This document shows positions 28,274 through 61,055 of a stretch of DNA of 64,000 nt, piece by piece (the first letter of the stretch is position 1; each line of letters begins with the position of its first letter). The DNA comes from Octopus bimaculoides. Its lineage: Eukaryota. Under the pieces are notes generated by a model. That model was not told the origin of the DNA. It searched no databases and was given only the letters and a program-made list of their open reading frames with translations. Both the position numbers and the translations under genes were made by a program. Where the stretch lies: NCBI RefSeq assembly GCF_001194135.2, contig NC_068987.1, positions 25,702,925 to 25,766,924 on the forward strand, read 5' to 3'.

Positions 28274-29082
28274 ATTTATCTATCGATGCGGATATACATA
28301 CATGCGCATATATATATATATATATATATATATNNNNNNNNNNNNNNNNNNNNNNNNNNNNNNNNNNNNNNNNNNNNNNNNNNNNNNNNNNNNNNNNNNN
28401 NNNNNNNNNNNNNNNNNNNNNNNNNNNNNNNNNNNNNNNNNNNNNNNNNNNNNNNNNNNNNNNNNNNNNNNNNNNNNNNNNNNNNNNNNNNNNNNNNNNN
28501 NNNNNNNNNNNNNNNNNNNNNNNNNNNNNNNNNNNNNNNNNNNNNNNNNNNNNNNNNNNNNNNNNNNNNNNNNNNNNNNNNNNNNNNNNNNNNNNNNNNN
28601 NNNNNNNNNNNNNNNNNNNNNNNNNNNNNNNNNNNNNNNNNNNNNNNNNNNNNNNNNNNNNNNNNNNNNNNNNNNNNNNNNNNNNNNNNNNNNNNNNNNN
28701 NNNNNNNNNNNNNNNNNNNNNNNNNNNNNNNNNNNNNNNNNNNNNNNNNNNNNNNNNNNNNNNNNNNNNNNNNNNNNNNNNNNNNNNNNNNNNNNNNNNN
28801 NNNNNNNNNNNNNNNNNNNNNNNNNNNNNNNNNNNNNNNNNNNNNNNNNNNNNNNNNNNNNNNNNNNNNNNNNNNNNNNNNNNNNNNNNNNNNNNNNNNN
28901 NNNNNNNNNNNNNNNNNNNNNNNNNNNNNNNNNNNNNNNNNNNNNNNNNNNNNNNNNNNNNNNNNNNNNNNNNNNNNNNNNNNNNNNNNNNNNNNNNNNN
29001 NNNNNNNNNNNNNNNNNNNNNNNNNNNNNNNNNNNNNNNNNNNNNNNNNNNNNNNNNNNNNNNNNNNNNNNNNNNNNNNNNN

Positions 29083-29651: not shown

Positions 29652-30038
29652 GTTGTTGTTGGCACTCTGTCGCTTACGACGTCGAGGGTTCCAGTTGATC
29701 CGATCAACGGAACAGCCTGCTCGTAAAATTAACGTGCAAGTGGCTGAGCACTCCACAGACACGTGTACCCTTAACGTAGTTCTCGGGGATATTCAGCGTG
29801 ACACAGTGTGACAAGGCTGGCCCTTTGAATTACAGGCACAACAGAAACAGGAAGTAAGAGTGAGAGAAAGTTGTGGTGAAAGAGTACAGCAGGGTTCGCC
29901 CCCATCCCCTACCGGAGCCTCGTGGAGCTTTTGGTGTTTTCGCTCAATGAACACTCACAACGCCCGGTCTGGGAATCGAAACCGCGATCCTATGGCCGCG
30001 AGTCCGCTGCCCTAACCACTCGGCCATTGCACCTCCAC
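29652..30038 (-). mobile_element. SINE family C, full length, (AAC)n tail, 14-bp TSD
   Basis: Same sequence as 16039-16413. Perfect TSD AGGTACTGTACACT at 29638-29651 and 30039-30052. Confidence 0.94.
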
Positions 30039-30088
30039 AGGTACTGTACACTAACCACAACATAACGTAATTAATATATATGAACTGA

Positions 30089-30304
30089 GTAAAGCGGCGA
30101 GCTGGCAGAATCATTAGCACGTTGAGCACGATGCTTAACGACATTTGAACCGTCTTTATGTTCTGACTTCAAATACCGCCGGGGTCTACTTTGCCTTTCA
30201 TCCTTTCGGGGTCGATAAAATAAGTACCAGTTGATCACTGGAGTCGATGTAATCGACTTAATCCTCTCCCTTAATCGCTGGCCTTGTGCCAAAATTTGAA
30301 ACCC
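30089..30304 (+). mobile_element. SINE family B, full length, 15-bp TSD
   Basis: GCGGCGAGCTGGCAGAATC...CTTTGCCTTTCATCCTTTCGGGGTCGATAAAATAAGTACCAG. Perfect TSD ATATATATGAACTGA at 30074-30088 and 30305-30319. Confidence 0.92.
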
Positions 30305-30769
30305 ATATATATGAACTGAAGATCCTCAAGTAGGCAAGCAAGTACCTATCTTGTCAGAGAGGGATTCTGGGGAGTTTCTTCCTGATCATTTCATTCATTA
30401 ATTCATTCACCAGGTTACAAGTCTCTCTTGATAGTGGTACCCCTCACTGGACTCCGCCTAGCACTATCTATTCGGTATTGGCCTTTGCTTCAAGGATTTA
30501 CCTCATCCACCACCGTAGGCCAGCGACGGTGCATTTCAGATACCTCGGCGGAATTTCAACTCAGAATGCAGAAAGTCGGTACAAAATCCACGAAGCAAAC
30601 AATCTGACATTCTTAAAAGATCCACCAATCCACTGTCTGGAATGGTAGTTTCATTGATCTTGAAAGTATGAAAAGCAAAGTTGACCGCAAATGTATTTGA
30701 TCTCAGATCGCAGTACGTCAGCGCAAACTCTGTAAAGCATTCAGCTCGCCGTGTCCGTTTCAAATCCTA

Positions 30770-39656: not shown

Positions 39657-40150
39657 AAGTGGCGCGCTGGCAGAATCGTTAGCACGCCGGGCGAAACGCT
39701 TAGCGTTACGTTCTGAGTTCAAATTCCGTCGAGGTCGACTTTGCCTTTCATCCTTTCGGGGTCGATAAAATAAGTACCAGTTGAACACTGGAGTCGATGT
39801 AATCGACTCATCCCCATCTCCCCCAAGCTGCCCTTGTGGAAAAAAAATTGAAATAATAATAATAATAATAATAATGATAATAATAATAATTATTATTATT
39901 ATTACAATAAAAGGTGGCGAACCGGCAGAATCGTTAGTATGCCAGGCAAAATGCTTACCAGTACTTCGTCTGTCTTTACACACTGAAGTCGATGTAACCG
40001 ACTAGCCCCTCCCACCAAAATTTCAGGTCATGTGCCTATAATAGAAAAGATTGTTTATTATTATTAGTATTAATATTAATATTATTATAAAAGTCGGCGA
40101 GCTGGCAGAATCGTTACAGCACTGAACAAAATGCATAGCTGCATTTTATC
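39657..40150 (+). mobile_element. Head-to-tail chain of three SINE family B copies separated by (ATT)n/(AAT)n
   Basis: Heads at about 39657 (GGCGCGCTGGCAGAATCG), 39910 (GGTGGCGAACCGGCAGAATCG) and 40089 (GTCGGCGAGCTGGCAGAATCG). Second copy has an internal deletion; third is head only. Confidence 0.85.
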
Positions 40151-40199: not shown

Positions 40200-41260
40200 C
40201 CCTTGGACCCAATAATTTTCTTTTAATTAAATTTTATTCAAACTACCACTATTTCTTAGCTACATTGTATATACTATCAGGTGAATGAAGAATTACTATT
40301 TCTCACAAATTTTAATAAAAAAAAATACAGCTTACAGAATATATTATAAATTTTAAAAATTACAAAAATACAGAATTACAGCTCTTCATGGCAGTGGGTG
40401 CATATAACATTGGAATGTTCTTGGCAAACATGGATATTACAATTCTTACATGTAGTACGATTTTTCCTGTGTTTTTGGGGGCCACACAAAGAACATTTTT
40501 TTTTTAACTTTGGCTGAGGAATTTCAAATGAGGTTGAAGATCGTCTTCTTCTTTTACTTGGTTGAGATACGTTAACGGAACTAGAAGATTGTTTGTCATG
40601 TTCTTTCTTAGCATTAACTCCAGCAAGTTCCTTTCCTAACTGAATTAAGCAGTCTTCTTTTATCCTTGAAACTTTGCAAGTGAAGCTGTTTAGCAACTAT
40701 GAAAGCATTCACTGCACTTATATCAATCATGTTGTAGAATATAACCATAGGCCATCTTCAAGTCATTCTTTTGCAAGTGTATGTATGTCCTTACCATCTT
40801 ATCTAGTGTATCTAATCTTCCTTTTGTTTTGTCGTAACATGTAATAACTTCAGGTGTCTTTTTAGCTCCTTTTGAATCAATTGAAGGCTGAGAGTACATT
40901 GTACTCATAAGTGTGACTACATAATTTTTCTTGGGACAATAAGATAGGATCAGAGAATCCTTTGAAATCCAAATATTGAAGCTGTTAATTTCTCTTTCTT
41001 TTTCCATTTGTGAAAGCACTTGGGAGTTCAACTCTGTTCTTTCTAATTGTTCCAACTAAAGTATTTTTCTTGCTAAGCAGCTTTCGATCCAATACCAGAC
41101 TTGTAAGTTATATTGCGACAGGTATTTTCAAGTTCTTTTACTAGGTCTTCAACAACTCTTGAACCTTGATTTGTCTCTCCCCCTTTTACTGGATCTTTTC
41201 CAGTGTAGATTTGCATTTTCCAGGCATAAGATGTTTCCCATTAGTAGACAGACGGTTGAA
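40200..41260 (-). mobile_element. piggyBac transposon fragment (3' half of transposase pseudogene plus right end)
   Basis: Broken frames: SYAWKMQIYTGKD..GSRVVEDLVK..TLVGTIRKNRVELP, then SYCPKKNYVVTLMSTM..TPEVITCYDKTKGRLDTLDKM (third catalytic Asp region). These are followed by a basic NLS-like PSKRRRR and the Cys-rich domain CSLC..C..C..HVCQEH..IC..C. End reads TTAA (40196-40199) + CCCTTGG. Confidence 0.92.
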
Positions 41261-41371
41261 CATATGTAGAGCTCATGTATTCCATATACAAGATGAGGTT
41301 TCAATGGTAGATCAAATCCTATGGTGTACCACTTGTTAAACTAAGAAGCTCGATATTGGTCTGGTGGCGTT

Positions 41372-47406: not shown

Positions 47407-48226
47407 CAATATAATTCGGAGCTTGGCGAAGCGAAATCGCGGTCACTTCTTGGACGATATCGTTTCGCCTAACTCTGGAGCATATTGTGTTTTTTTAACA
47501 CTATACGTCTATAAATAGATTTTTCCAGAACGAAAACTGCAGCGCCTTGCATTTCAATTACGCACATACACTTAGTATGTTGTATTGATAGAATATATAT
47601 ATAGAATGAGCTTCCGCGCAGTTTTCTGCCTGCCAATTGCATTCACAAAGCATTGGTTGGTTCGAGACTACAGGAGAAGAAACTTGTCCAAGAATCCACG
47701 CAGTAGATCTGATTCCGAAAGCATTTTGTTGCCAATGCATGAATTTTCTTAAAAATTCATTACTAGAAACTTATTTCTTTATCATAATTCTTGTCTTGCA
47801 GAATCAGGAAATAATTTAGTCATAATTTAGTTTTAAAATCTAATAATACACACCCAAGAGCAAAGAATAAGTTGTATAATTTATAGAAATGGCTTAAAGT
47901 GTCTATGTTTAATTTCAAATAATACTTATCTCCAATGATGTAGCTAGATTGTGTGCTATCTGAGTTTGCGCACCCTCAGGCCCTGAAGTCTATTATGCTT
48001 ATACAGCATCTCCATAAAAACGTTGCTCGGAGTGAACCAATCTTAGTTACTACCTTACTGTATTTTAAGAGTAGTTGGTTCTGTCCAGTGGCACAGAGGT
48101 GCCCACTGTGAACATCGTGACAATTCACGACAGTGCCACCACCACCTCCACCAAACAATACCATATCTTCCACAGCTATAGCTGAAAATCATCGCCCTCA
48201 AGACTCCTATCACTTTCACAACATTA

Positions 48227-48443
48227 CTGGCTTCAAATTTCGGTACAAGGCCAGCAACTTCGGGAGTTGGATGATGTCGATTACACTGACCCCAGTGCCT
48301 AACTGGTTCTCATTTTATAGACCCCGAAAGGTTGAAAGGCAAAGTCGACTTCGGTGGCATTTTAAACTCAAAACGTTGAGCCGGACGAAATGCTGCTAAG
48401 CATTTTGTCCGGCGTGCTTAACGGTTCTACCAGCTCGTCACCC
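48227..48443 (-). mobile_element. SINE family B, full length, 17-bp TSD
   Basis: Reverse-complement family B. TSD TCACTTTCACAA(C/A)ATTA at 48210-48226 and 48444-48460 (16/17). Confidence 0.9.
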
Positions 48444-48473
48444 TCACTTTCACAAAATTATTATCACTATTAC

Positions 48474-48878
48474 TAAGACGGTGAGAAAAATCATTAACAC
48501 GCCAGACAAAATGCTTAGCAGCATTTCGTCCGTCTTTATGTTCTGAGTTCAAATGCCGCCGAGGTCGACTTTGCCTTTTATCCTTTCGGCTTGATAAATC
48601 AAATACTAGTCGAACACTGGGGTTGATAGACCCTCCCGCAAAATTTCAGTCCTTGAGCCAATAACAGACAGGATTATTATCAATAACACTAAGGCGACGA
48701 ACAGGCAGAATCGTTAGCAAGCCGGAGAAAATGCTTATCGGCATTTCATCCCTCTTTATGTCCTGAGTTCAAATTCCACCGAGATCAGCTTTGCGTTTCA
48801 TCCTTTCGAGATCGTACTGGGGTAGATCCAACCCCCTCCCACCACATTTCAGACCTTGTGTGTCTATAATACAAAGGA
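48474..48878 (+). mobile_element. Two tandem SINE family B copies (48474-48672 and 48689-48878)
   Basis: Both carry CAAAATGCTTA..GCATTTC..CTTTATGT.CTGAGTTCAAAT..CGAG.TC..CTTTGC.TTT.ATCCTTTCG and are separated by ATTATTATC. Confidence 0.85.
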
Positions 48879-51303
48879 TTATCATCACCACCACTACAAC
48901 CACCAACATTATTGCTATTCCCAGTACTGTCATAATCATTACTACCGCAATCCTAGTATACCCTCTATAACTTAGTTTCACATCCCCAACACCACCACCG
49001 CAACTTGGAACAAGCCATATTATACTCAAGTACAAAGTGCATGACATATCCGCCCCAAACAGTTTTGGTTTAAACCAAAATTGGAGAGTTGGATGGTATT
49101 TCTTACTTTATGTTGTTATTTAAATTATTTTTTTCCTGTTTCTTCTCTGAATATGTAAATGAGATTCAAGCGTTTTGAGGTATACGATGGTGATTGTGAT
49201 AGACGTTCTGGTAAAGGTGATGGTTGTTGGGTCGTCCTTAATAGCTTCGAAAGAGGAGGAGGTGGTGATGGCGGTTGGTGACGGTGGTGCTGGTGCTGGC
49301 TGCATCAACGAAGAATTGCTTATGTGCCGGAAGTGATGGCGCAGGGGATTGGTGGTGGTGGTGGTGGTGAGGAGGAGTGCTGTTAGGTCGGTTGTTAATA
49401 GTGCAGGAGGTTGTTAATGGGGAATGATGTTAGCAGTGGGTCGTTAATAGCGGTAGTGGGAGCATATTGGTTGGGCTAATTGTGGTGCGGTGTGAGTTCA
49501 GTCTCAGATGATGGTAGTGGAGTAGGCCATGGTGCTGGTGTCGGCGGTTAAGGAACAAACATGGTGCTAGTCCATCGGCTAATGCTGCTATTAACCGGGA
49601 TGATGCTAGGTCGTATGATGGTAGCAGTAGCAACAGTAAAACTAGTGGTGGTGGTGGTGGTAGTAGTAGTAGTTATTGTAAAGATGATGGCCCTTGTGGT
49701 CGTACTAGCAGTTGTGTTTGATGATGGTGGTGGTGTAGATGGAGTTAGTGGCTGTGAAGGCGGTGGTGGTAGTGGTAGTGGTTTTGGTGACGGTTGTGGT
49801 AGTGGTGGTTATGGTCGGGAAGGCAACCATCTCTTCAGTTTGGTTCGCCTGATCACCAAAATTCTGCGGTGCTGATTTTCTCACCCTATTCTTTAAAGGC
49901 AAATTGACATTTCCGTTCCCCCCACATCATCACCTTCACCACCAATCAGAGACCGGATTTACCAAATAATAATAATAATAATAATAATAATAAAGTAAGC
50001 CAGTTTCGAAAATTACTTCTTTTTTTATTGTTGTTTAGTGGTTTGTGTTGTTGATCTATTGTTGTGCTTTTTTTTCTTTTCTTTTTTCTTTTTGTTATTG
50101 TTATAACTGAAAACAGTCTCTTTAGCATCTCTATTATCTTTCAATCTGAAAGACTACTAGAATATAGAGCAAAAATTTGAACTACAAAACTTAAGAACAA
50201 AGTTGTCTAGCAGATAGCGATTGGGGTGAAGGGGTAAAGGAAGGTTTTGTTATTTTATTTTGTTTTTCATCAATTTATCTTTTTACATTTTCTTTTATTT
50301 TTGTTGGAATTCTTGTTTCTTCATTTCATTCTTCTGTTTTGGAATTACAAGCTGAGACACGTTGTTAATGATTCTACCATAAGTAGCAGATTTGATCTCG
50401 TCATTACAAACAAGAGAAATTCTTGAGCTGCAGCACTTATTTGCAGTTAACCCGTCGTCCCGTTTAATGCCACCAAGTGGTCTTCCAGTGCTTTTAGCAG
50501 TGGCCCGAAAGCTGGCAACAAAGTGGAATCTACTTTTAGCAAACTCCACTTTGTTTCAAAATTCGGATCAATTCACTGGCCTGAAGATAATTTCTTCCCT
50601 TTTTTCTGTCAGTTTCGGATGCTCAGAAAAAGGGTCTTGGGTGCTGCTTTTCTTTCCATCCCTTATTAATAATACAAAAAAAAAAAAAAAAAAGCAAAAC
50701 AGAAAATATAATTGCTGGCTGTCGACTGTGCCACTGATGTAGGTTAACTGTCTTGGCTGTCTGTAAACGCCAGTGCAACGGTTCCGAAGAGGAAACACGA
50801 ATCCCGGTCAGTAAAACTGGATGTTCGACAGACTACCGATTCAACTGTCAGCTACTTATTGCCTTCTAATGCAAGTCAACGAAGGGATAATTAAGTGGTC
50901 ACTCGACATGCTACAAATAGCAGCTAATAATGCTTCAAATCCAGCCCTGCCAGCTTTATTGAAAGACATTGGACAACATTGTCTTGGATATACAAAAAGA
51001 GGGGGACGCTCACCTCATGCCATAGTAATGCTCGATCATGACTTATTTGGATTAAAACAACAATAAAATGAAAAGCAACAACTGCATTCGATTATTCTTA
51101 CTCACGTTTGTTGTTTCTCTCTAACTCTCACTAAGTATTGGTTTTGTGCTTGTGTGTATGTATTTATGCACACATATATGTTAGTGCATGTATGTCCTTA
51201 TTCAGTTTTTATTTCAAAATTTCTTGTCGATAGAGAAAGAGCTGGTTTCTAGCTTGGATCCAAGGCTCCTTCATTAGAATTTCATCGACAAAGTATGTAT
51301 GTA

Positions 51304-53770: not shown

Positions 53771-53992
53771 AGGCAAAGGCAGCGAGCTAGCAGAATCGTT
53801 AGCATGCCGGGCAAAATGTTTAGTAGCATTTCGTCCGTCTATACGTTCTGAGTTCAAATGCTGCGGAGGTCAACTTTGCCTTTTATCGTTTCAGGATCGA
53901 TAAAATAAGTACCAGTTGAACGCTGAAGTCGACGTATTTGACTAATCCCCTCTTGTAAAAATTGCTGGCCTTGTACCTATAGCAGAAAGGAA
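53771..53992 (+). mobile_element. SINE family B, full length, 9-bp TSD
   Basis: GGCAGCGAGCTAGCAGAATCGTTAGC...TACGTTCTGAGTTCAAATG. TSD TATATAGAC at 53762-53770 and 53993-54001. Confidence 0.88.
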
Positions 53993-54699
53993 TATATAGA
54001 CTGCCCTTTGATAAAAGTAAACATAGACTATGCATGTGAATACGTAAGTTAAAAACTGATCATTGCTTTCTTTAGCATGAAAGAAATAAGCATGAAAGAA
54101 AAACAAAAACAAAACGTCACATCTGATCTGGTGAAACGAGACAATGAAACGGTGACATGTTTTGTGGAGTAATAACGAAAAAGTGCCGTTCTGTCTGCTT
54201 GTATGTTTTGTAAATCAATGAATCTGAGGAAATTGAGAGTCCAGTTGGGACTTGCAGTGTCTTGCACGTTCTTGTCTCCTCCTCCTTTTCTTTTTTATTA
54301 ACTTTTTAAAATTTTTTTATATGTATATATTTATGATATTTAAAGGCTGGTTTGTTCTGTTCATGCATAGCTAAGTTCTTTCTGAACCTGTTGCATGACT
54401 TGGTTCATAAGGTTTCTATGTGTGTGACTCAATAATTGTAGCTTTTAAAGAGTAGAACGTTTAAAGATATTTTGTAATTTCGATGATAATAATTGTTTAA
54501 TGATTTAGTTAGAAGGTGCACATTATCAAACAAGACAATTTCTAGGTCTCCGTGATCCTCTTAAAAGAAAAAGATTGTTATTCTCGAACCAGTTTCCAAG
54601 CCATTATTCTCACAATAGAGTTGGCTCTGCTAAAGACATTTAGCTGTCAAATGGTGATGATAAACTCTGTGGAAAATTAAGTCGATTACCCACTGAACA

Positions 54700-54850
54700 T
54701 AAATGGATCCTCCTATAATGGGAGTCTACACAATTTCTGTCTATTCAGTTTTATTTTCTAGGCTTTGATTGAACCAAGGCTATAGTAGAAGGTTCTTATC
54801 CAGGGTGTCATGCAGTAACACTGAACCTCAAACCAAGCAACCACGCAAAG
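54700..54850 (-). mobile_element. Degenerate SINE family A-related head
   Basis: AGGCTATAGTAGAAGG...GGTGTCATGCAGTAACACTGAACC matches reverse-complement family A head. Confidence 0.45.
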
Positions 54851-55661
54851 TATAAGCGTCTGCGCCCAGATAAGGCATATAGTGTTCTATAAGTCATACA
54901 ATTAAGATTACCATCGTCTTTATTTACGGAAGTTTTTGATACTTTGATTAAGCGACAAAATTATAAGCGGTTTAGCAGCGCGTTCGATGAAACGATCGAC
55001 TGACCACAGCTTTACTATAATGCAGTTTTTAAGGGACCAGGAAAAATATATATGTATGAGAAAGAGAGACAGAGAGAGAAAGAATAAAAATATTTAATTA
55101 CTAAAAGCGAAAAGGTATTTGTTTTCTATCAGAGTATCAGCAAAGCTATGCCAGTAATATATTTTCTAAGAAATTTTAATCTATAGTCAAAACAACACAG
55201 TGTAGCCCTGAGAAACACCACCCAAGGGAAGAGAGAGGGTGAGAAAGATTCTCTGTGTTATAGAAAACAGCCGGTTTGATCTCCGATTGTCATTAGTTAT
55301 CTCATTCCCGAATATAAACATATGAGACTGGACTCGATCTAGGAACTTGTGTTTTAAAACTGACGATAATAATAATGTTCTTTTTCTTTAAACCACTGTT
55401 CCCTGTACCAATGAACAAGAATTTCATTGCCCTTATTTTAGAAACGAGGATCCGTAGTTCTAATCCAGCCAGGCACTATATGCATATGTAGGTACAAAAC
55501 ACTACATCTGCATTAAAGATCAAATCAATCGAAATAGAATATTGACGAATATTGAAATTATAACATTTCTAAAGATGAGTATGGAAAATGGAAATCTTTG
55601 TGGTTTTCAATTTAACTCAATAAACATAACGCTGTTGTTGTTGTTATTGTTGTTATTATTA

Positions 55662-55707
<46 letters not shown>

Positions 55708-55734
55708 ATTTTGTGTTTTTGAAGTAAAAAGAAA

Positions 55735-55843
55735 ACTAACGATTTTTTCTCTTTTATTTTTTTCAGGTAAGTGTTCTAAAGAATTTATTCTGGTCTGCCT
55801 GCAAGTTATTTTCATCAATTTCTATTTCCTTATAACGGTATGT
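55735..55843 (+). promoter_or_regulatory. Candidate recursive splice site (AG|GT ratchet point) with 71-nt cryptic exon
   Basis: ACTAAC at 55735-55740; 20/21 pyrimidines at 55743-55763 with no intervening AG; CAG at 55764-55766 immediately followed by the perfect donor GTAAGT at 55767-55772; second donor ACG|GTATGT at 55835-55843. Confidence 0.6.
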
Positions 55844-56826
55844 TTCGGTTTTCATCTTACAATTTTCCCCCATTTCCCGGCATTTAAGCGAAAAAGCAAT
55901 CCTAGGTTATCATGGAAGATAAATGTACAATCATTTCCCCACCAACTCAATGCTTTTCCTTTACAATAGTCTCTTTTTTTTTAACAACCTTTTGAGCAGA
56001 CATTTCGAAATATGTTATTACAACCTCTTCCAATATAGACTAACCTGTTTCAGTGTTACATCTGGGCTTATTTCTAAAGCTTTCTGTTTTGGTTGTATAT
56101 TTAGACGTTTTCACAGACATAGGGATATGGGAATTAAAAAAAAAAAAAGAAAAAAAGAACGCTTTATATAATTTTCTCATCAACGTCTTGATTCGTATTT
56201 CAACTCATGATTTTGCTATAGATAATCTACTAAGCATCTCCTTATTTGATCTAAATTGGTTAAATAAGGCAAAAACAACGTGAGGAAAAACTGAATGAAT
56301 ATAATGAACTAAGATGTTGTCATATCGTATAACGAATGTACGATATCTTGTTTGCTTGTTTATATATGAGCCAGAGATGTAACACAAAGTACATAAGTGA
56401 AATAAAATGATGAAACAACTATGAATCGAAACCTTACGTTGACTCCTTGCTTACTGAAAGCTTTCACTTCTGCAAGATAGTTTATATTAACCGCATGATA
56501 TTCAATATATTTTGCTGGCTCTGTTTGAAGTGGTTAAGAATTTGCTCACTAATATCTCCAGAGTAATACTAAATCGTTCTTTCGTATCGATTTCTTTGAG
56601 TTCTTTCAACAATTCCTTTTTTGATCATCTGCTTTATGCATTGTGTTTTATGAGCGCAAACATAAAGAAAGAAAGAAAATGTGAGCAGAGAAATTGATAA
56701 ATTTTCTCTCATCTTCCTTCACATTCATTCACTTCGGATAAATAATAAATAAAATTAATTTTCAATGAATAGCTATTGATTGCAGCTGCAGGTTTCGTAA
56801 ACGAGCCTGAAAAGATGTATGTTCTG

Positions 56827-56869
<43 letters not shown>

Positions 56870-57242
56870 AATCATAACGCACACACATTCTGTTTCTATA
56901 GTATTTTGTATTTGTTAAAACGCATGGGCTAATATGATTATTTATTCAGATGAGTAGACAATCGGATGTCATACGTCCGAATGTTGATATAATACTGCAG
57001 ATATGCATATATGGTAAAAATATAATTTATTCCTACATACTGCTTTGATCTTCAGTCTTCAACTTGCTACAAGATTTTTGCCAACTTTCAAAAGATACAC
57101 AGTTGTTAACATAACACACTCATTTGTTTGCTTTACATTTCTGCTTATCCCATCACTGTAGTACTTCTATGAATTAGTTCGTTCATTTCGCCAATGCTTG
57201 CACGATTATGCAAATTAAACCAATATAGTATTACCCAAATGT

Positions 57243-57305
<63 letters not shown>

Positions 57306-57989
57306 TGTGTGTGTGCTTGTGTGTGTGTGTGTGAATGGCAGATAAACACACATAAGCTTAAGTATATTCACAATTAATACAAATTAAAGAGTACGGAATA
57401 AGAATACAAACATGAAAGGACATTTGTATTAGTCTTTTCTTGACAGCTGTTTCGGGTGAACTATGGCTTATGTTGTAACCACGGTCATTACATAATACAT
57501 TACAGAATAAACACCCATAATGTCGTAAATGTATAGAATAACACAAGTTTTTATGGCTCCGTTAAGGAAAGCCAGTCCATCCACATCGAAATAATGTACT
57601 ATAAACAGCTATAAACTACTAGTCTCTGGATTACTAGGGCTGAGTGACTGATTTCCAACGAAACTTTAACGAAAGCTAGTCAGATGGATCTCATTTCCTG
57701 GTCACAGAGAGTGAGAAAAAAAATCTGTGATTTAACCCCAGTACGTTTTATAAAATCACACGGCTATGCTTTTTATCTTACCCAAACAAACCCTTTTGTC
57801 GTAAGAATCTACTATTTAGTATGTGTGTGTGCGTAGTTGATGATGATTTCCTCTGTCAAAAATGACAGATGAGGAGTTCTGCAATTTCTTGACGAAGAAC
57901 CTCTGCAGAAGATTTGTTTACAATGACCAAATGTTTGTGCTGTACAATAAGCTTATTCACTCTATCTAATCGACATTACATATTCAGGT

Positions 57990-58135
57990 GCATGGCGTGC
58001 AACACGTCAGATGTTGAACTGATCGCAGGAGAACGTGAAATGTTTACTCAAGAGCACAACACACCTCCTGATCCGGGAATTAAAATCTTGATCTTGCGAT
58101 CACAAATGCAGTACCCAAGGTCACGAGCCTTCACT
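57990..58135 (-). mobile_element. Degenerate C'-type SINE head fragment
   Basis: GGAGAACGTGAAATGTTTACTCAAGAGCACAACAC...CCGGGAATTAAAATC..GATCTTGCGATC resembles 16855-16960. Confidence 0.5.
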
Positions 58136-58466
58136 ATATATGCACACACTGCGCCAAGCTGATTGTGTCGGAGAAATACGAAAAAGGTAGACCTGTCTAT
58201 AGAACGTTCAGCCATTTACACGCTAATTCAAATTGCAAGAAATTCATTTGATCGAACAACTGAATAGACGGAGATCCATTGATATACATATATATATAAG
58301 CATTGATTTATGTTGAATGGATGAGAGACGAGTGTTCACTGAGCTTTGAATAGGACATTGTTTATTTTTATTGAAACTGACAGTTTGTCTTGTGGCGCAG
58401 GTTTCACTCAACTGCGATCTTCGGCGTAAGACAGGTTTTTTGCGAGACGCACTCTCAGTTTCAGTC

Positions 58467-58533
<67 letters not shown>

Positions 58534-58694
58534 GTATGTGTGTGTGTGTGTGTGTAACACTCTCACACACAAGATACATTTTGTCTGATTAAAAGATGGC
58601 GTGATCAAGATTTCCGGTTATAAATCAGATCGATTTGAACTCAGCTGAGGTTAAATAATAATAGCGCACGCAAGCACATGAACGTATATGCGTG

Positions 58695-58734
<40 letters not shown>

Positions 58735-59993
58735 CTGAATTTAATTCAGGTATGTATGTATGTATGTAACCAAAATTCCAAATTCGGAAACGTTTGGTCA
58801 ACTCACGTTTCGCAATCAGTCTTTCTTCCTTCCGACATTTATACGNNNNNNNNNNNNNNNNNNNNNNNNNNNNNNNNNNNNNNNNNNNNNNNNNNNNNNN
58901 NNNNNNNNNNNNNNNNNNNNNNNNNNNNNNNNNNNNNNNNNNNNNNNNNNNNNNNNNNNNNNNNNNNNNNNNNNNNNNNNNNNNNNNNNNNNNNNNNNNN
59001 NNNNNNNNNNNNNNNNNNNNNNNNNNNNNNNNNNNNNNNNNNNNNNNNNNNNNNNNNNNNNNNNNNNNNNNNNNNNNNNNNNNNNNNNNNNNNNNNNNNN
59101 NNNNNNNNNNNNNNNNNNNNNNNNNNNNNNNNNNNNNNNNNNNNNNNNNNNNNNNNNNNNNNNNNNNNNNNNNNNNNNNNNNNNNNNNNNNNNNNNNNNN
59201 NNNNNNNNNNNNNNNNNNNNNNNNNNNNNNNNNNNNNNNNNNNNNNNNNNNATATATATATATATATATAGAGTAGTCGCATCCAAAATGGACGTGACTA
59301 CCAACGTTTCAAAGTGGAACACTTGAAGAATTGTGAATTTTTACCACATGAAACCATTGGTATTCTTTTTAATCCACACAGAAATAAATATACAGGTAGT
59401 ATGTATACACTAAACACACACACACGCTCATTTATATGTAAACGCACATGCAAGCACCTCGTCGTCTGCTATGAACTGACATCTGCTACGAAACTATATA
59501 TATAGAGATAGATACAGGAAGAGAAAGAGAGAATGAAAGAAAGACATACAGACAAAAGGAGAGGTACATGCAGATGTATACAACTAACTTTTAACGCGCT
59601 CTCTATTACAAACAGCATAGAAGTAGCGGAGGGGCAATGGAATGAAAGATATGAAGAGAGGGGGGTGATTATGTGATAGAAGTGATACGGTTAGACAGGG
59701 GTGAGAAATATTTTGTAAGGCTGTGTATGAGATAAAGTGAGAGCGAGATACCGAGATAGAGGGAAACTGTGATGATAGAGTGAGAGAAAGAGAGAGAGGG
59801 GGGGAGTGAAAGGTAGGTCTACATTTGAATGACTATCTTACATAGACCCCCCCTACCGTGTGTGTGTGTGCATATATGCTTATATGCATACATATTTTCG
59901 TACAGATGCTTATAATAAATAAATGTGTGTGTGTTTGTGTATGTGCGCGTGTGTGTGTGGTTGAGTGCCCTTCTTTCGTTTGTCCACTCACTC

Positions 59994-60032
<39 letters not shown>

Positions 60033-60466
60033 NNNNNNNNNNNNNNNNNNNNNNNNNNNNNNNNNNNNNNNNNNNNNNNNNNNNNNNNNNNNNNNNNNNN
60101 NNNNNNNNNNNNNNNNNNNNNNNNNNNNNNNNNNNNNNNNNNNNNNNNNNNNNNNNNNNNNNNNNNNNNNNNNNNNNNNNNNNNNNNNNNNNNNNNNNNN
60201 NNNNNNNNNNNNNNNNNNNNNNNNNNNNNNNNNNNNNNNNNNNNNNNNNNNNNNNNNNNNNNNNNNNNNNNNNNNNNNNNNNNNNNNNNNNNNNNNNNNN
60301 NNNNNNNNNNNNNNNNNNNNNNNNNNNNNNNNNNNNNNNNNNNNNNNNNNNNNNNNNNNNNNNNNNNNNNNNNNNNNNNNCCAAACCCAAACATACAGGT
60401 AATACCGAGTAAGTGCTATAAAATATATTTCTAACTTTGCCATTGTTCTCTTTATCCTTTTCTCTT

Positions 60467-60514
<48 letters not shown>

Positions 60515-60945
60515 GGTAAACATCCCACTACGGGCAACCGCCTAGTGCGATGGAGGTGTTTTTCCTACTATGCGTATGTGTGTGTGCTTCTGTGTGGCGT
60601 ATTGTGTGTGTGTGTGTGTGTGTAGTACGGACGTTTATGCATACACATGATTTCAAATACACATGGAAACTCCTATATGTATGTTTGCATGTGTGTGAAG
60701 TCTTGCCTTTCTGAAAATTGCCAAAAATGTTGTTTCTGGTGCCAAGATGAAGTCTGTAGCCAAGTTCACTAGAATCCACACCATTCCACCTACTTCCAGT
60801 CTGGTTGCTAGGGATTTCAAGTTACTAAGTATCCACCATCGTGACTATCAATTTCCTTATAGTAGCAACATTTCCACCATCACCACCACCACCACCACCA
60901 CTGACACCGCCGCCATAACAACTACATGACTTCCTTTAAATAACA

Positions 60946-61055
60946 TCTTAGTACTAGGCTTAGTACTAGGCTTCCAAAGAATAAGTCCTGGGGTCGATTT
61001 GCTCGACTAAAGGCGGTGCTCCAGCTTGGCCGCAGTCAAAAGACTGAAACAAGTA
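60946..61055 (+). mobile_element. SINE family A 3' fragment
   Basis: AGTACTAGGCTT (duplicated), then AAAGAATAAGTCCTGGGGTCGATTTGCTCGACTAAAGGCGGTGCTCCAGC.TGGCCGCAGTCAAA.GACTGAAACAAGTAAA. Confidence 0.85.

What the first reader, a model, noticed from the sequence alone, without database searches (positions are those of the whole stretch)
55735..55843. Textbook recursive-splicing (ratchet) site with cryptic RS-exon, implying stepwise removal of a giant intron in a probable cephalopod gene
Seen: branch-like ACTAAC (branch A at 55739, 27 nt before the AG), a 21-nt pyrimidine tract with one purine and no other AG, and CAG directly followed by GTAAGT. A second donor ACG|GTATGT lies exactly 71 nt downstream. 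I found no other site in the window combining all four elements. Established: Drosophila ratchet points and vertebrate RS-sites in long introns have this AG|GT architecture and use a short downstream cryptic exon for exon definition; that exon is often frame-shifting. Here 71 is not a multiple of 3 and two of three frames contain TAA. Inference: the window, which has no recognisable exon, lies in a very long + strand intron spliced recursively, something I am not aware of being described in molluscs. Alternative: a real 71-nt cassette exon (the third frame is open: KCSKEFILVCLQVIFINFYFLIT) that happens to begin with GTAAGT.
Basis: partly seen in the sequence, partly recalled or inferred. Interest (0 to 1): 0.85.

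Follow-up and report, generated by a model that had tools for sequence, protein, structure and literature searches.

The report
Recursive splice-site motif in octopus DNA
A near-perfect "splice in, then splice out again" signal sits in repeat-rich octopus DNA with no detectable gene; it is rarer than chance predicts and may mark stepwise removal of a giant intron, but nothing here shows it is transcribed or used.

Summary

The site is the only AGGTAAGT on either strand of the window and by far its best acceptor-donor composite. I measured background in 186 kb of octopod DNA. About 5e-4 sites this strong are expected per window from tract plus GTAAGT alone. A conservative combination of all four features gives 6e-4 to 3e-3 per window, or tens to about 100 per genome.

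The window is octopod. Its Helitron remnant matches Octopus proteins best, and 12.5% of it matches repeats in two other Octopus loci.

I found no exon, RNA gene or strand signal, and no orthologous sequence could be retrieved. Intron context, transcription, strand and conservation therefore remain untested.

Published motif counts show 4- to 22-fold sense-strand enrichment of such sites in giant introns of five invertebrates, but not vertebrates. No mollusc has been examined.

- **Best reading (about 0.45):** a genuine intronic recursive splice site with a cryptic 71-nt exon.
- **Main rival (about 0.35):** an unused chance motif.

If real, it is a new member of a known kind.

The parts
55633..55706 (.). 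(TGT)n then (TTA)n microsatellite upstream of the site. It is low-complexity, T-rich context and is not part of the splice signals.
   Evidence: Tandem Repeats Finder; sequence
55735..55740 (+). Branch-point-like ACTAAC, with the branch A at 55739, 27 nt upstream of the acceptor G.
   Evidence: A CTAAC with its A 18-40 nt upstream occurs at 1.8% of random positions.
55743..55763 (+). Polypyrimidine tract, 20 of 21 pyrimidines (mostly T), with no AG between branch and acceptor, and TT at -5/-6.
   Evidence: Only 9 of 20,939 AG dinucleotides in 186 kb of octopod DNA have at least 21 of 22 pyrimidines upstream.
55764..55766 (+). CAG acceptor (putative 3' splice site; the junction lies after 55766).
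55767..55772 (+). GTAAGT directly after the acceptor. This is the 5' splice site that would be regenerated once an upstream exon is joined here.
   Evidence: It scores 12.7 bits on a generic donor matrix and is the only donor of that strength in the window.
55767..55837 (+). Putative cryptic RS-exon: 71 nt, 31% GC (same as the flanks), TAA in two frames, third frame open.
   Evidence: It was also the best of only 14 exon-like intervals in the window.
55838..55843 (+). Downstream donor ACG|GTATGT, which would define the RS-exon. It is weaker than the regenerated donor.
   Evidence: It scores 7.9 bits and is the only donor above 4 bits within 330 nt downstream.

Best explanation
This is an intronic recursive splice site (ratchet point) on the + strand of a very long intron of an unidentified octopus gene.

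The inferred mechanism has four steps:
1. U2AF and U2 bind the T-rich tract, the CAG and the ACTAAC branch, while U1 binds the downstream ACG|GTATGT. Together they define a 71-nt cryptic exon.
2. The distant upstream exon is spliced to 55767, releasing the first intron segment as a lariat branched at about 55739.
3. The new junction recreates a strong donor (exon end|GTAAGT). It outcompetes the weaker donor at 55838, so the 71 nt and the rest of the intron are removed in the next step and nothing of the site remains in mRNA.
4. If the cryptic exon were retained, it would shift the frame and probably trigger decay.

Shown here: the signals exist, they are arranged correctly, and they are rare by chance. 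Inferred: everything about transcription, strand and use.
For: - All signals are at the stated coordinates.
- The site is the single top outlier among 297 AG|GT sites in the window and the only AGGTAAGT.
- From 186 kb of octopod background, the chance expectation is 4.6e-4 per window for tract plus GTAAGT, and 6e-4 to 2.7e-3 with all four features Fisher-combined.
- A 20-nt Y-tract-YAG|GTRAGT pattern is expected 0.07 times by shuffling.
- The regenerated donor (12.7 bits) is stronger than the downstream donor (7.9 bits), which is the only one within 330 nt. Efficient recursive splicing requires this (PMC6224609, PMC8605326).
- The downstream donor lies less than 100 nt away, as at most Drosophila sites (PMC6224609).
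- TT at -5/-6 is found in 99.5% of Drosophila ratchet points (bioRxiv 10.1101/006163).
- The cryptic exon is short and out of frame (PMC8605326).
- The region is single-copy in the window and is not matched by repeats of other Octopus loci.
- No exon is detectable within 55 kb upstream or 8 kb downstream, as a giant intron would require.
- All five non-vertebrates examined by Shepard et al. show 4- to 22-fold sense-strand enrichment of this motif in introns over 50 kb (PMC2773006, Table 2).
Against: - There is no evidence of transcription, strand or a host gene. No exon, Pfam domain (other than transposon remnants), Rfam family or tRNA was found.
- There is no strand asymmetry of T/A runs, and CpG o/e of 0.73 is uninformative.
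- A 64-kb exon-free stretch fits intergenic DNA equally well.
- Conservation could not be tested.
- Thresholds were chosen after seeing the site. The conservative estimate still allows tens to about 100 equally good chance sites in a roughly 2.5-Gb genome.
- The tract lies next to a microsatellite in a genome where about 1% of positions sit in pyrimidine tracts.
- Octopus genomes are vertebrate-sized and repeat-rich, and vertebrates show no motif enrichment (PMC2773006) and only about 10 efficient intronic sites (PMC6224609).
- There is only one such site in 64 kb.
Confidence: 0.45

Rival explanations
1. This is a chance juxtaposition with no function. A T-rich low-complexity tract next to a microsatellite happens to end in CAG and to be followed by GTAAGT, in DNA that is intergenic, untranscribed or antisense to a gene.
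For: - AGGTAAGT itself is not enriched: 1 observed against 2.3 expected.
- About 1% of positions lie in pyrimidine tracts of at least 20 of 21.
- The tract lies 37 nt 3' of a 74-bp (TGT)n/(TTA)n array.
- The Fisher-combined expectation is 26-114 equally good sites per 2.5-Gb genome.
- There is no exon, gene or strand signal in the window.
- The downstream donor is a 4-6% coincidence, and stops in two frames are expected at 31% GC.
- The features were picked post hoc by a reader looking for something interesting.
Against: - The per-window probability is only 5e-4 to 3e-3 even on the conservative estimates, and 4e-7 to 2e-6 if all four thresholds are required jointly.
- The site is a lone extreme outlier in the window and in a further 127 kb of non-gap Octopus DNA.
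- The relative strengths of the two donors happen to be in the functional order.
Confidence: 0.35
2. This is the 3' splice site of a real expressed exon that merely begins with GTAAGT. It could be an alternative, poison, UTR or lncRNA exon of 71 nt, or one ending at another donor. That would make it an 'expressed RS-exon' of the kind common in deuterostomes.
For: - A real internal exon automatically brings branch, tract, AG and a downstream donor, so only the GTAAGT start needs to be a coincidence.
- One frame is open.
- It is the best exon-like interval in the window.
- Thousands of annotated human exons regenerate a donor in this way (PMC6224609).
Against: - GC content is 31%, identical to the flanks.
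- The open frame encodes a hydrophobic, low-complexity peptide typical of translated AT-rich DNA. One open frame in three is expected about 40% of the time (my arithmetic from base composition).
- 71 nt is not a multiple of 3.
- A query containing this peptide found no protein at E <= 1e-3 among 5.8 billion, including Octopus RefSeq sets, and Pfam found nothing.
- A GTAAGT this strong would favour skipping (PMC6224609).
Confidence: 0.12
3. This is another non-recursive origin for the acceptor. It could be an acceptor-like site created by the reverse complement of an A-rich/(AAT)n tail of a - strand retroposon (the route by which antisense Alu elements are exonised). Or it could be the acceptor of a cryptic alternative last exon that uses a downstream poly(A) signal.
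For: - On the - strand the region reads as an A-rich stretch followed by an (AAT)n/(AAC)n array, which resembles a retroposon tail.
- ATTAAA at 56133 and AATAAA at 56401 follow the acceptor.
- Transposon remnants are frequent in the window.
Against: - No repeat-family match was found for 54,840-60,960, either within the window or in 127 kb of non-gap Octopus DNA from other loci.
- Poly(A) hexamers are expected by chance in 32% GC DNA.
- Neither idea explains the perfect GTAAGT abutting the AG.
Confidence: 0.05

Closest known systems
Drosophila intronic ratchet points with cryptic RS-exons (Ubx, kuz, Bx; Burnette 2005, Duff 2015, Joseph 2018/2021)
   Same: - Long T-rich tract, then CAG|GTAAGT.
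- TT at -5/-6.
- A short, out-of-frame cryptic exon closed by a weaker donor less than 100 nt downstream.
- Located far from any exon.
   Different: - A different phylum, and a genome about 20 times larger.
- No junction, sawtooth, lariat or conservation evidence here.
- The host intron is not identified.
- Only one site in 64 kb, whereas fly recursive introns often carry several.
Vertebrate recursive sites in long neuronal genes (e.g. CADM2; Sibley 2015, as described in PMC5126111 and PMC6224609)
   Same: - YAG|GT core.
- Recognition by exon definition through a downstream donor.
- A cryptic exon that would introduce a premature stop.
- The regenerated donor must beat the downstream one.
   Different: Vertebrate sites are few (about 10 efficient ones), and the motif is not enriched over the antisense strand (PMC2773006). 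This matters because motif alone predicts poorly in vertebrates, and the octopus genome resembles vertebrates in size and repeat load.
Annotated (expressed) RS-exons kept in mRNA by the exon junction complex (Blazquez 2018, PMC6224609)
   Same: An exon whose first bases regenerate a 5' splice site after upstream splicing.
   Different: Those exons are coding and are included. Here the 71 nt look non-coding (31% GC, no homologue), and the regenerated donor is maximal, which favours skipping.
RP-site motif enrichment in giant introns of invertebrates (Shepard, McCreary & Fedorov 2009, PMC2773006)
   Same: The same kind of purely sequence-based call. It supplies the only available prior: sense/antisense ratios of 4-22 in sea urchin, fly, mosquito, bee and beetle.
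   Different: No mollusc was analysed. That study knew each intron's strand, whereas here the strand is unknown.
Exonisation of antisense retroposon tails (Alu-type)
   Same: A poly-T tract from a reverse-complemented A-rich tail supplies a polypyrimidine tract and a cryptic acceptor.
   Different: No retroposon body was detected next to the tract, and the abutting GTAAGT is not part of that model.

Membership tests
Intronic recursive splice site (ratchet point) with cryptic RS-exon | [quoted passage not shown] | tested here: met
   T-rich 20/21 tract + CAG|GTAAGT at 55743-55772. It is the top outlier of 297 AG|GT sites.
Intronic recursive splice site (ratchet point) with cryptic RS-exon | TT at positions -5 and -6 of the acceptor (99.5% of Drosophila ratchet points; bioRxiv 10.1101/006163) | tested here: met
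   T at 55761 and 55762.
Intronic recursive splice site (ratchet point) with cryptic RS-exon | A downstream 5' splice site within about 100 nt that defines a short cryptic exon, usually out of frame or stop-containing | tested here: met
   ACG|GTATGT at 55838 gives a 71-nt interval with TAA in two frames. The weight is weak: this is a 4-6% coincidence.
Intronic recursive splice site (ratchet point) with cryptic RS-exon | Regenerated donor stronger than the RS-exon donor | tested here: met
The first value includes the genomic CAG, which would be replaced by the upstream exon's last bases.
Intronic recursive splice site (ratchet point) with cryptic RS-exon | Lies on the sense strand inside a long (>10-20 kb) intron of a transcribed gene | tested here: inconclusive
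   No exon, domain or RNA gene was found on either strand in 64 kb. There is no strand signal. The window's own record could not be reached.
Intronic recursive splice site (ratchet point) with cryptic RS-exon | Core motif conserved across related species well above the flanking intron | not testable with these tools
   No cephalopod DNA collection is searchable by DNA. Indirect attempts through called ORFs and an exact 24-mer found nothing.
Intronic recursive splice site (ratchet point) with cryptic RS-exon | Splice-junction reads into the site, a sawtooth in nascent/total RNA coverage, and lariats to and from the site | not testable with these tools
Expressed RS-exon / ordinary cassette exon | The interval is present in mature transcripts; if coding, it has coding composition and protein homologues | tested here: not met
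   - GC is 31%, equal to the flanks.
- No Pfam hit.
- No protein at E <= 1e-3 for a query containing the open frame.

Presence in transcripts itself is not testable here.

The most novel reading that the evidence does not exclude
Octopuses, and probably coleoid cephalopods generally, use fly-style zero-nucleotide recursive splicing routinely to remove the giant introns of their large genes. This site would then be one of hundreds of conserved ratchet points. That would extend the mechanism to Lophotrochozoa. It would also show that a vertebrate-sized, repeat-rich genome can still rely on recursive splicing.
Probability: 0.3. Interest if true: 0.55.

Novelty: new member of a known kind. Interest (0 to 1): 0.3.

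Why it matters
Recursive splicing has been demonstrated in flies and vertebrates. From motif counts alone it has been inferred in a few other invertebrates. No mollusc has been examined in the literature I could search.

Cephalopods combine an invertebrate lineage with a vertebrate-sized, repeat-laden genome and very long neuronal genes. They are therefore a natural test of whether recursive splicing tracks ancestry or genome architecture.

One motif cannot answer that. It does justify a cheap genome-wide test: compare sense and antisense counts of this motif in annotated long introns of Octopus, squid and cuttlefish. It also supplies a concrete site for RT-PCR.

If the site is unused, the result is still useful. 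It calibrates how often 'textbook' splice composites arise by chance in this kind of genome.

Tried and rejected
**Finding the window's own record or same-locus contigs**
- Exact-product look-ups of ORFs 55923-56171(+) and 6095-6610(-) found nothing on record.

**Finding orthologous loci**
- I searched a chimera of 12 ORF translations from within about 1 kb of the site, including the 23-aa open frame. It drew 8000 candidates, and none scored E <= 1e-3.
- An exact 24-mer scan of metagenome contigs gave 0 hits.

**Checking whether the Octopus Helitron loci are orthologous to the window**
- L001 and L002 share only the transposon and scattered repeats with the window, so they are not collinear.

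**Exon hunt**
- I reviewed stop-free segments on six frames.
- A splice-site-flanked open-interval scan gave 14 weak candidates.
- Amino-acid composition log-odds reached at most 11.7 bits.
- Pfam on single ORFs found only transposon domains.
- Pfam on four chimeras covering all non-repeat segments of at least 40 aa found nothing. The chimeric format also lost the known piggyBac hit, so that negative is weak.

**Homology searches on individual ORFs**
- A full HMMER scan of ORF 50815-51063 against 1.84 billion representatives gave one spurious hit, to a repeat motif in a bacterial HYR protein.
- The last homology search, on the transposon pieces, found no self-match. The window's remnants are therefore not annotated proteins, and the host record stays unknown.

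**Other features checked**
- Rfam and tRNA scans found nothing.
- I rejected a U1 snRNA gene on the - strand. ACTTACCTG is only the complement of the donor, and there was no Rfam hit.
- Strand evidence from T/A runs, repeat orientation (12:5) and CpG o/e was uninformative.
- RNA folding of the site gave z = +1.4, so there is no structure.
- The annotated 34-kb Octopus sinensis 'gene' in L003 joins two Helitron fragments, so it is not a usable intron control.
- One multi-term literature search returned only irrelevant papers.

Full report
**The observation**

ACTAAC lies at 55735-55740, with the branch A at 55739. A 21-nt tract follows at 55743-55763, with 20 pyrimidines, almost all T. No AG occurs between the branch and the acceptor. 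CAG at 55764-55766 directly abuts GTAAGT at 55767-55772. A second donor, ACG|GTATGT, has its GT at 55838, which leaves a 71-nt interval. Two frames of that interval contain TAA, and the third is open. T occupies -5 and -6, a feature of 99.5% of Drosophila ratchet points (bioRxiv 10.1101/006163).

The tract lies 37 nt downstream of a (TGT)n/(TTA)n microsatellite at 55633-55706.

**Is it more than chance?**

The octamer AGGTAAGT is not enriched. It occurs once on both strands, against 2.3 expected from dinucleotide shuffles. The composite is what is unusual. Ranked by upstream pyrimidine content and donor match, this site stands far above the other 296 AG|GT sites in the window.

I built an empirical background from the window plus five Octopus loci, 186 kb of non-gap DNA counted on both strands:
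- Only 9 of 20,939 AG dinucleotides, including this one, have at least 21 of 22 pyrimidines upstream with no intervening AG.
- Only 0.36% of GT dinucleotides start GTAAGT.
- A CTAAC-type branch at 18-40 nt occurs at 1.8% of random positions, and the looser CTRAY at 7.2%.
- A donor of at least 7.8 bits at 30-120 nt downstream occurs at 4-6% of positions.

Treating the halves as independent gives these expected numbers of chance sites per window:
- 4.6e-4 for tract plus GTAAGT.
- 4e-7 to 2e-6 if all four observed thresholds must be met together.
- 6e-4 to 2.7e-3 with Fisher's combination, which allows trade-offs among features and so partly corrects for choosing thresholds after the fact.

I scaled these to a genome of about 2.5 Gb. 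That size is from my own knowledge; the two Octopus chromosome records seen here are 192 and 213 Mb. The result ranges from under 1 to about 100 equally good chance sites. The site is therefore rare, but chance is not excluded.

The stops and the non-multiple-of-3 length add essentially nothing in 31% GC DNA.

**What the window is**

The window is 37% GC, with 16 assembly gaps (4,656 N) and dinucleotide microsatellites throughout.

Its longest real ORF (6098-6640, - strand) is a Helitron/Pif1 helicase remnant (Pfam PF21530). The best named relatives of that ORF are Octopus bimaculoides and O. sinensis proteins at 69-78% identity, against 55-60% for other animals. The corresponding Octopus loci share the element at 82-85% nucleotide identity, along with many short interspersed repeats, but they are not collinear with the window. 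Just 43 kb of those loci match 12.5% of the window.

A piggyBac remnant (40379-41340) and a reverse-transcriptase tail (14225-14617) also lie on the - strand.

'Probable cephalopod' is therefore supported, and the genome is specifically octopod. The gap style resembles the O. bimaculoides assembly, but the species is not established.

**Is it an intron, and which strand?**

I could not establish this. Several exon searches found nothing convincing:
- stop-free segments on six frames;
- open intervals flanked by acceptor-like and donor-like sites, which gave 14 weak candidates with the finding's own interval the best;
- amino-acid composition scoring;
- Pfam on single ORFs;
- Pfam on chimeras of all non-repeat segments, a low-sensitivity test because the known piggyBac hit was lost in that format.

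The most protein-like + strand ORF, 50815-51063, has no real homologue among 1.84 billion representatives. Rfam and tRNA scans were empty.

T-run against A-run counts, repeat orientation (12:5) and CpG o/e (0.73) give no usable strand or gene-body signal. The three protein-coding transposon remnants all lie antisense to the proposed transcript. That is the usual bias inside genes, but three cases prove nothing.

An exon-free 64 kb fits a giant intron and an intergenic desert equally well.

**Conservation**

Conservation was not testable. No tool searches cephalopod DNA by nucleotide sequence. Indirect routes failed: exact look-ups of window ORFs, a protein search with translations of everything within about 1 kb of the site, and an exact 24-mer scan of metagenomes. 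The third protein search showed that the window's transposon remnants are not annotated proteins, so its source record stayed out of reach.

**Mechanism if functional**

The anatomy fits the current model of recursive splicing (PMC8605326, PMC6224609).
1. Exon definition across a short cryptic exon.
2. Splicing of the upstream exon to the acceptor.
3. Regeneration of a donor at the junction.
4. Use of that donor in preference to the cryptic exon's own donor, so that nothing remains in mRNA.

The required asymmetry is present. No other donor above 4 bits lies within 330 nt. CAG|GTAAGT is fully complementary to the 5' end of U1 snRNA (established knowledge). After recursion, the three exonic positions would come from the upstream exon. 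The RNA around the site is, if anything, less structured than shuffled controls.

**Weighing the readings**

The deciding unknown is how many true recursive sites an octopus genome holds.

Shepard et al. (PMC2773006, Table 2) counted this motif in introns over 50 kb. They found sense/antisense ratios of 21.7 (fly), well above 10 (mosquito), 8.0 (beetle), 8.2 (sea urchin) and 4.0 (bee). The eight vertebrates gave ratios of 1.5 or less. Background was about 0.1 per 100 kb.

If octopus behaves like the other invertebrates, true sites of this strength should outnumber chance ones several-fold. If it behaves like vertebrates, which it resembles in genome size and repeat load, chance wins. Efficient intronic sites number 197 or more in flies but about 10 in humans (PMC6224609).

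I put roughly two-thirds weight on the invertebrate pattern. My estimates are:
- about 0.45 for a genuine intronic recursive site;
- about 0.35 for an unused chance motif;
- about 0.12 for the acceptor of a real expressed exon that happens to start with GTAAGT, disfavoured by non-coding composition and the absence of any protein match;
- about 0.05 for other origins, namely a retroposon-tail-derived acceptor or a cryptic last exon.

**Comparison and novelty**

The site meets every sequence-level criterion of a ratchet point with a cryptic RS-exon. The context, conservation and usage criteria are untested, so I do not file it as a demonstrated member.

No paper in the searchable library mentions recursive splicing together with octopus, and only two papers mention it incidentally alongside molluscs. 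The library omits most subscription journals.

If confirmed, this would be a new member of a known kind in a new phylum, not a new mechanism. As it stands it is a good, cheap-to-test lead of modest interest.

Noticed in passing
window 5870-7011 (ORF 6098-6640, - strand): Helitron/Pif1-helicase remnant (Pfam PF21530). Its closest named proteins are from Octopus bimaculoides and O. sinensis, and copies in those genomes are 82-85% identical in DNA. This is the main evidence that the window is octopod.
   Followed up: yes
window 40379-41340 (- strand): piggyBac transposase remnant broken into three or four frames (PF13843). It includes the Cys-rich C-terminal piece at 40379-40696. The best relatives are only 28-39% identical, so this is an old copy.
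   Followed up: partly
window 14225-14617 (- strand): An intact 131-aa ORF that forms the C-terminal tail of a reverse-transcriptase protein (53-56% identity to PF00078-bearing proteins). The rest of the element was not delimited.
   Followed up: partly
window, 17 places, e.g. 12787-13025, 22904-23117, 29900-30450, 39657-39844, 48229-48437, 53776-53998: A SINE-like interspersed repeat family at 70-94% identity, also present in the fetched Octopus loci. Its orientation is 12:5, which is not significant.
   Followed up: partly
L002 (Octopus sinensis CM016873.1) position 18721, + strand: Another acceptor-like AG|GT with a perfect 22/22 pyrimidine tract (…TTTTCTTTTCTTTTTTCTTTTCAG|GTTAAG), but a poor donor. 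It shows that strong acceptor-like tracts abutting GT do occur elsewhere in Octopus DNA.
   Followed up: no
L003 (Octopus sinensis CM016859.1) 10001-44056: The annotated gene LOC115209711 (193 aa) joins two Helitron-derived fragments 33 kb apart. It looks like a doubtful gene model rather than a real long-intron gene.
   Followed up: partly
window 48000-51300: This is the most GC-rich part of the window (about 44%), with several 80-120-aa open segments on both strands. They have no Pfam or protein match, and the only hit was a spurious one to a bacterial HYR repeat. It is possibly an unrecognised old transposon.
   Followed up: partly
window, 16 N runs (e.g. 2821-3331, 14925-15668, 28334-29082, 58846-59251): 7% of the window is assembly gap, mostly flanked by dinucleotide microsatellites. 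Short exons could be hidden in the gaps. The nearest gap to the site is 3 kb away.
   Followed up: no
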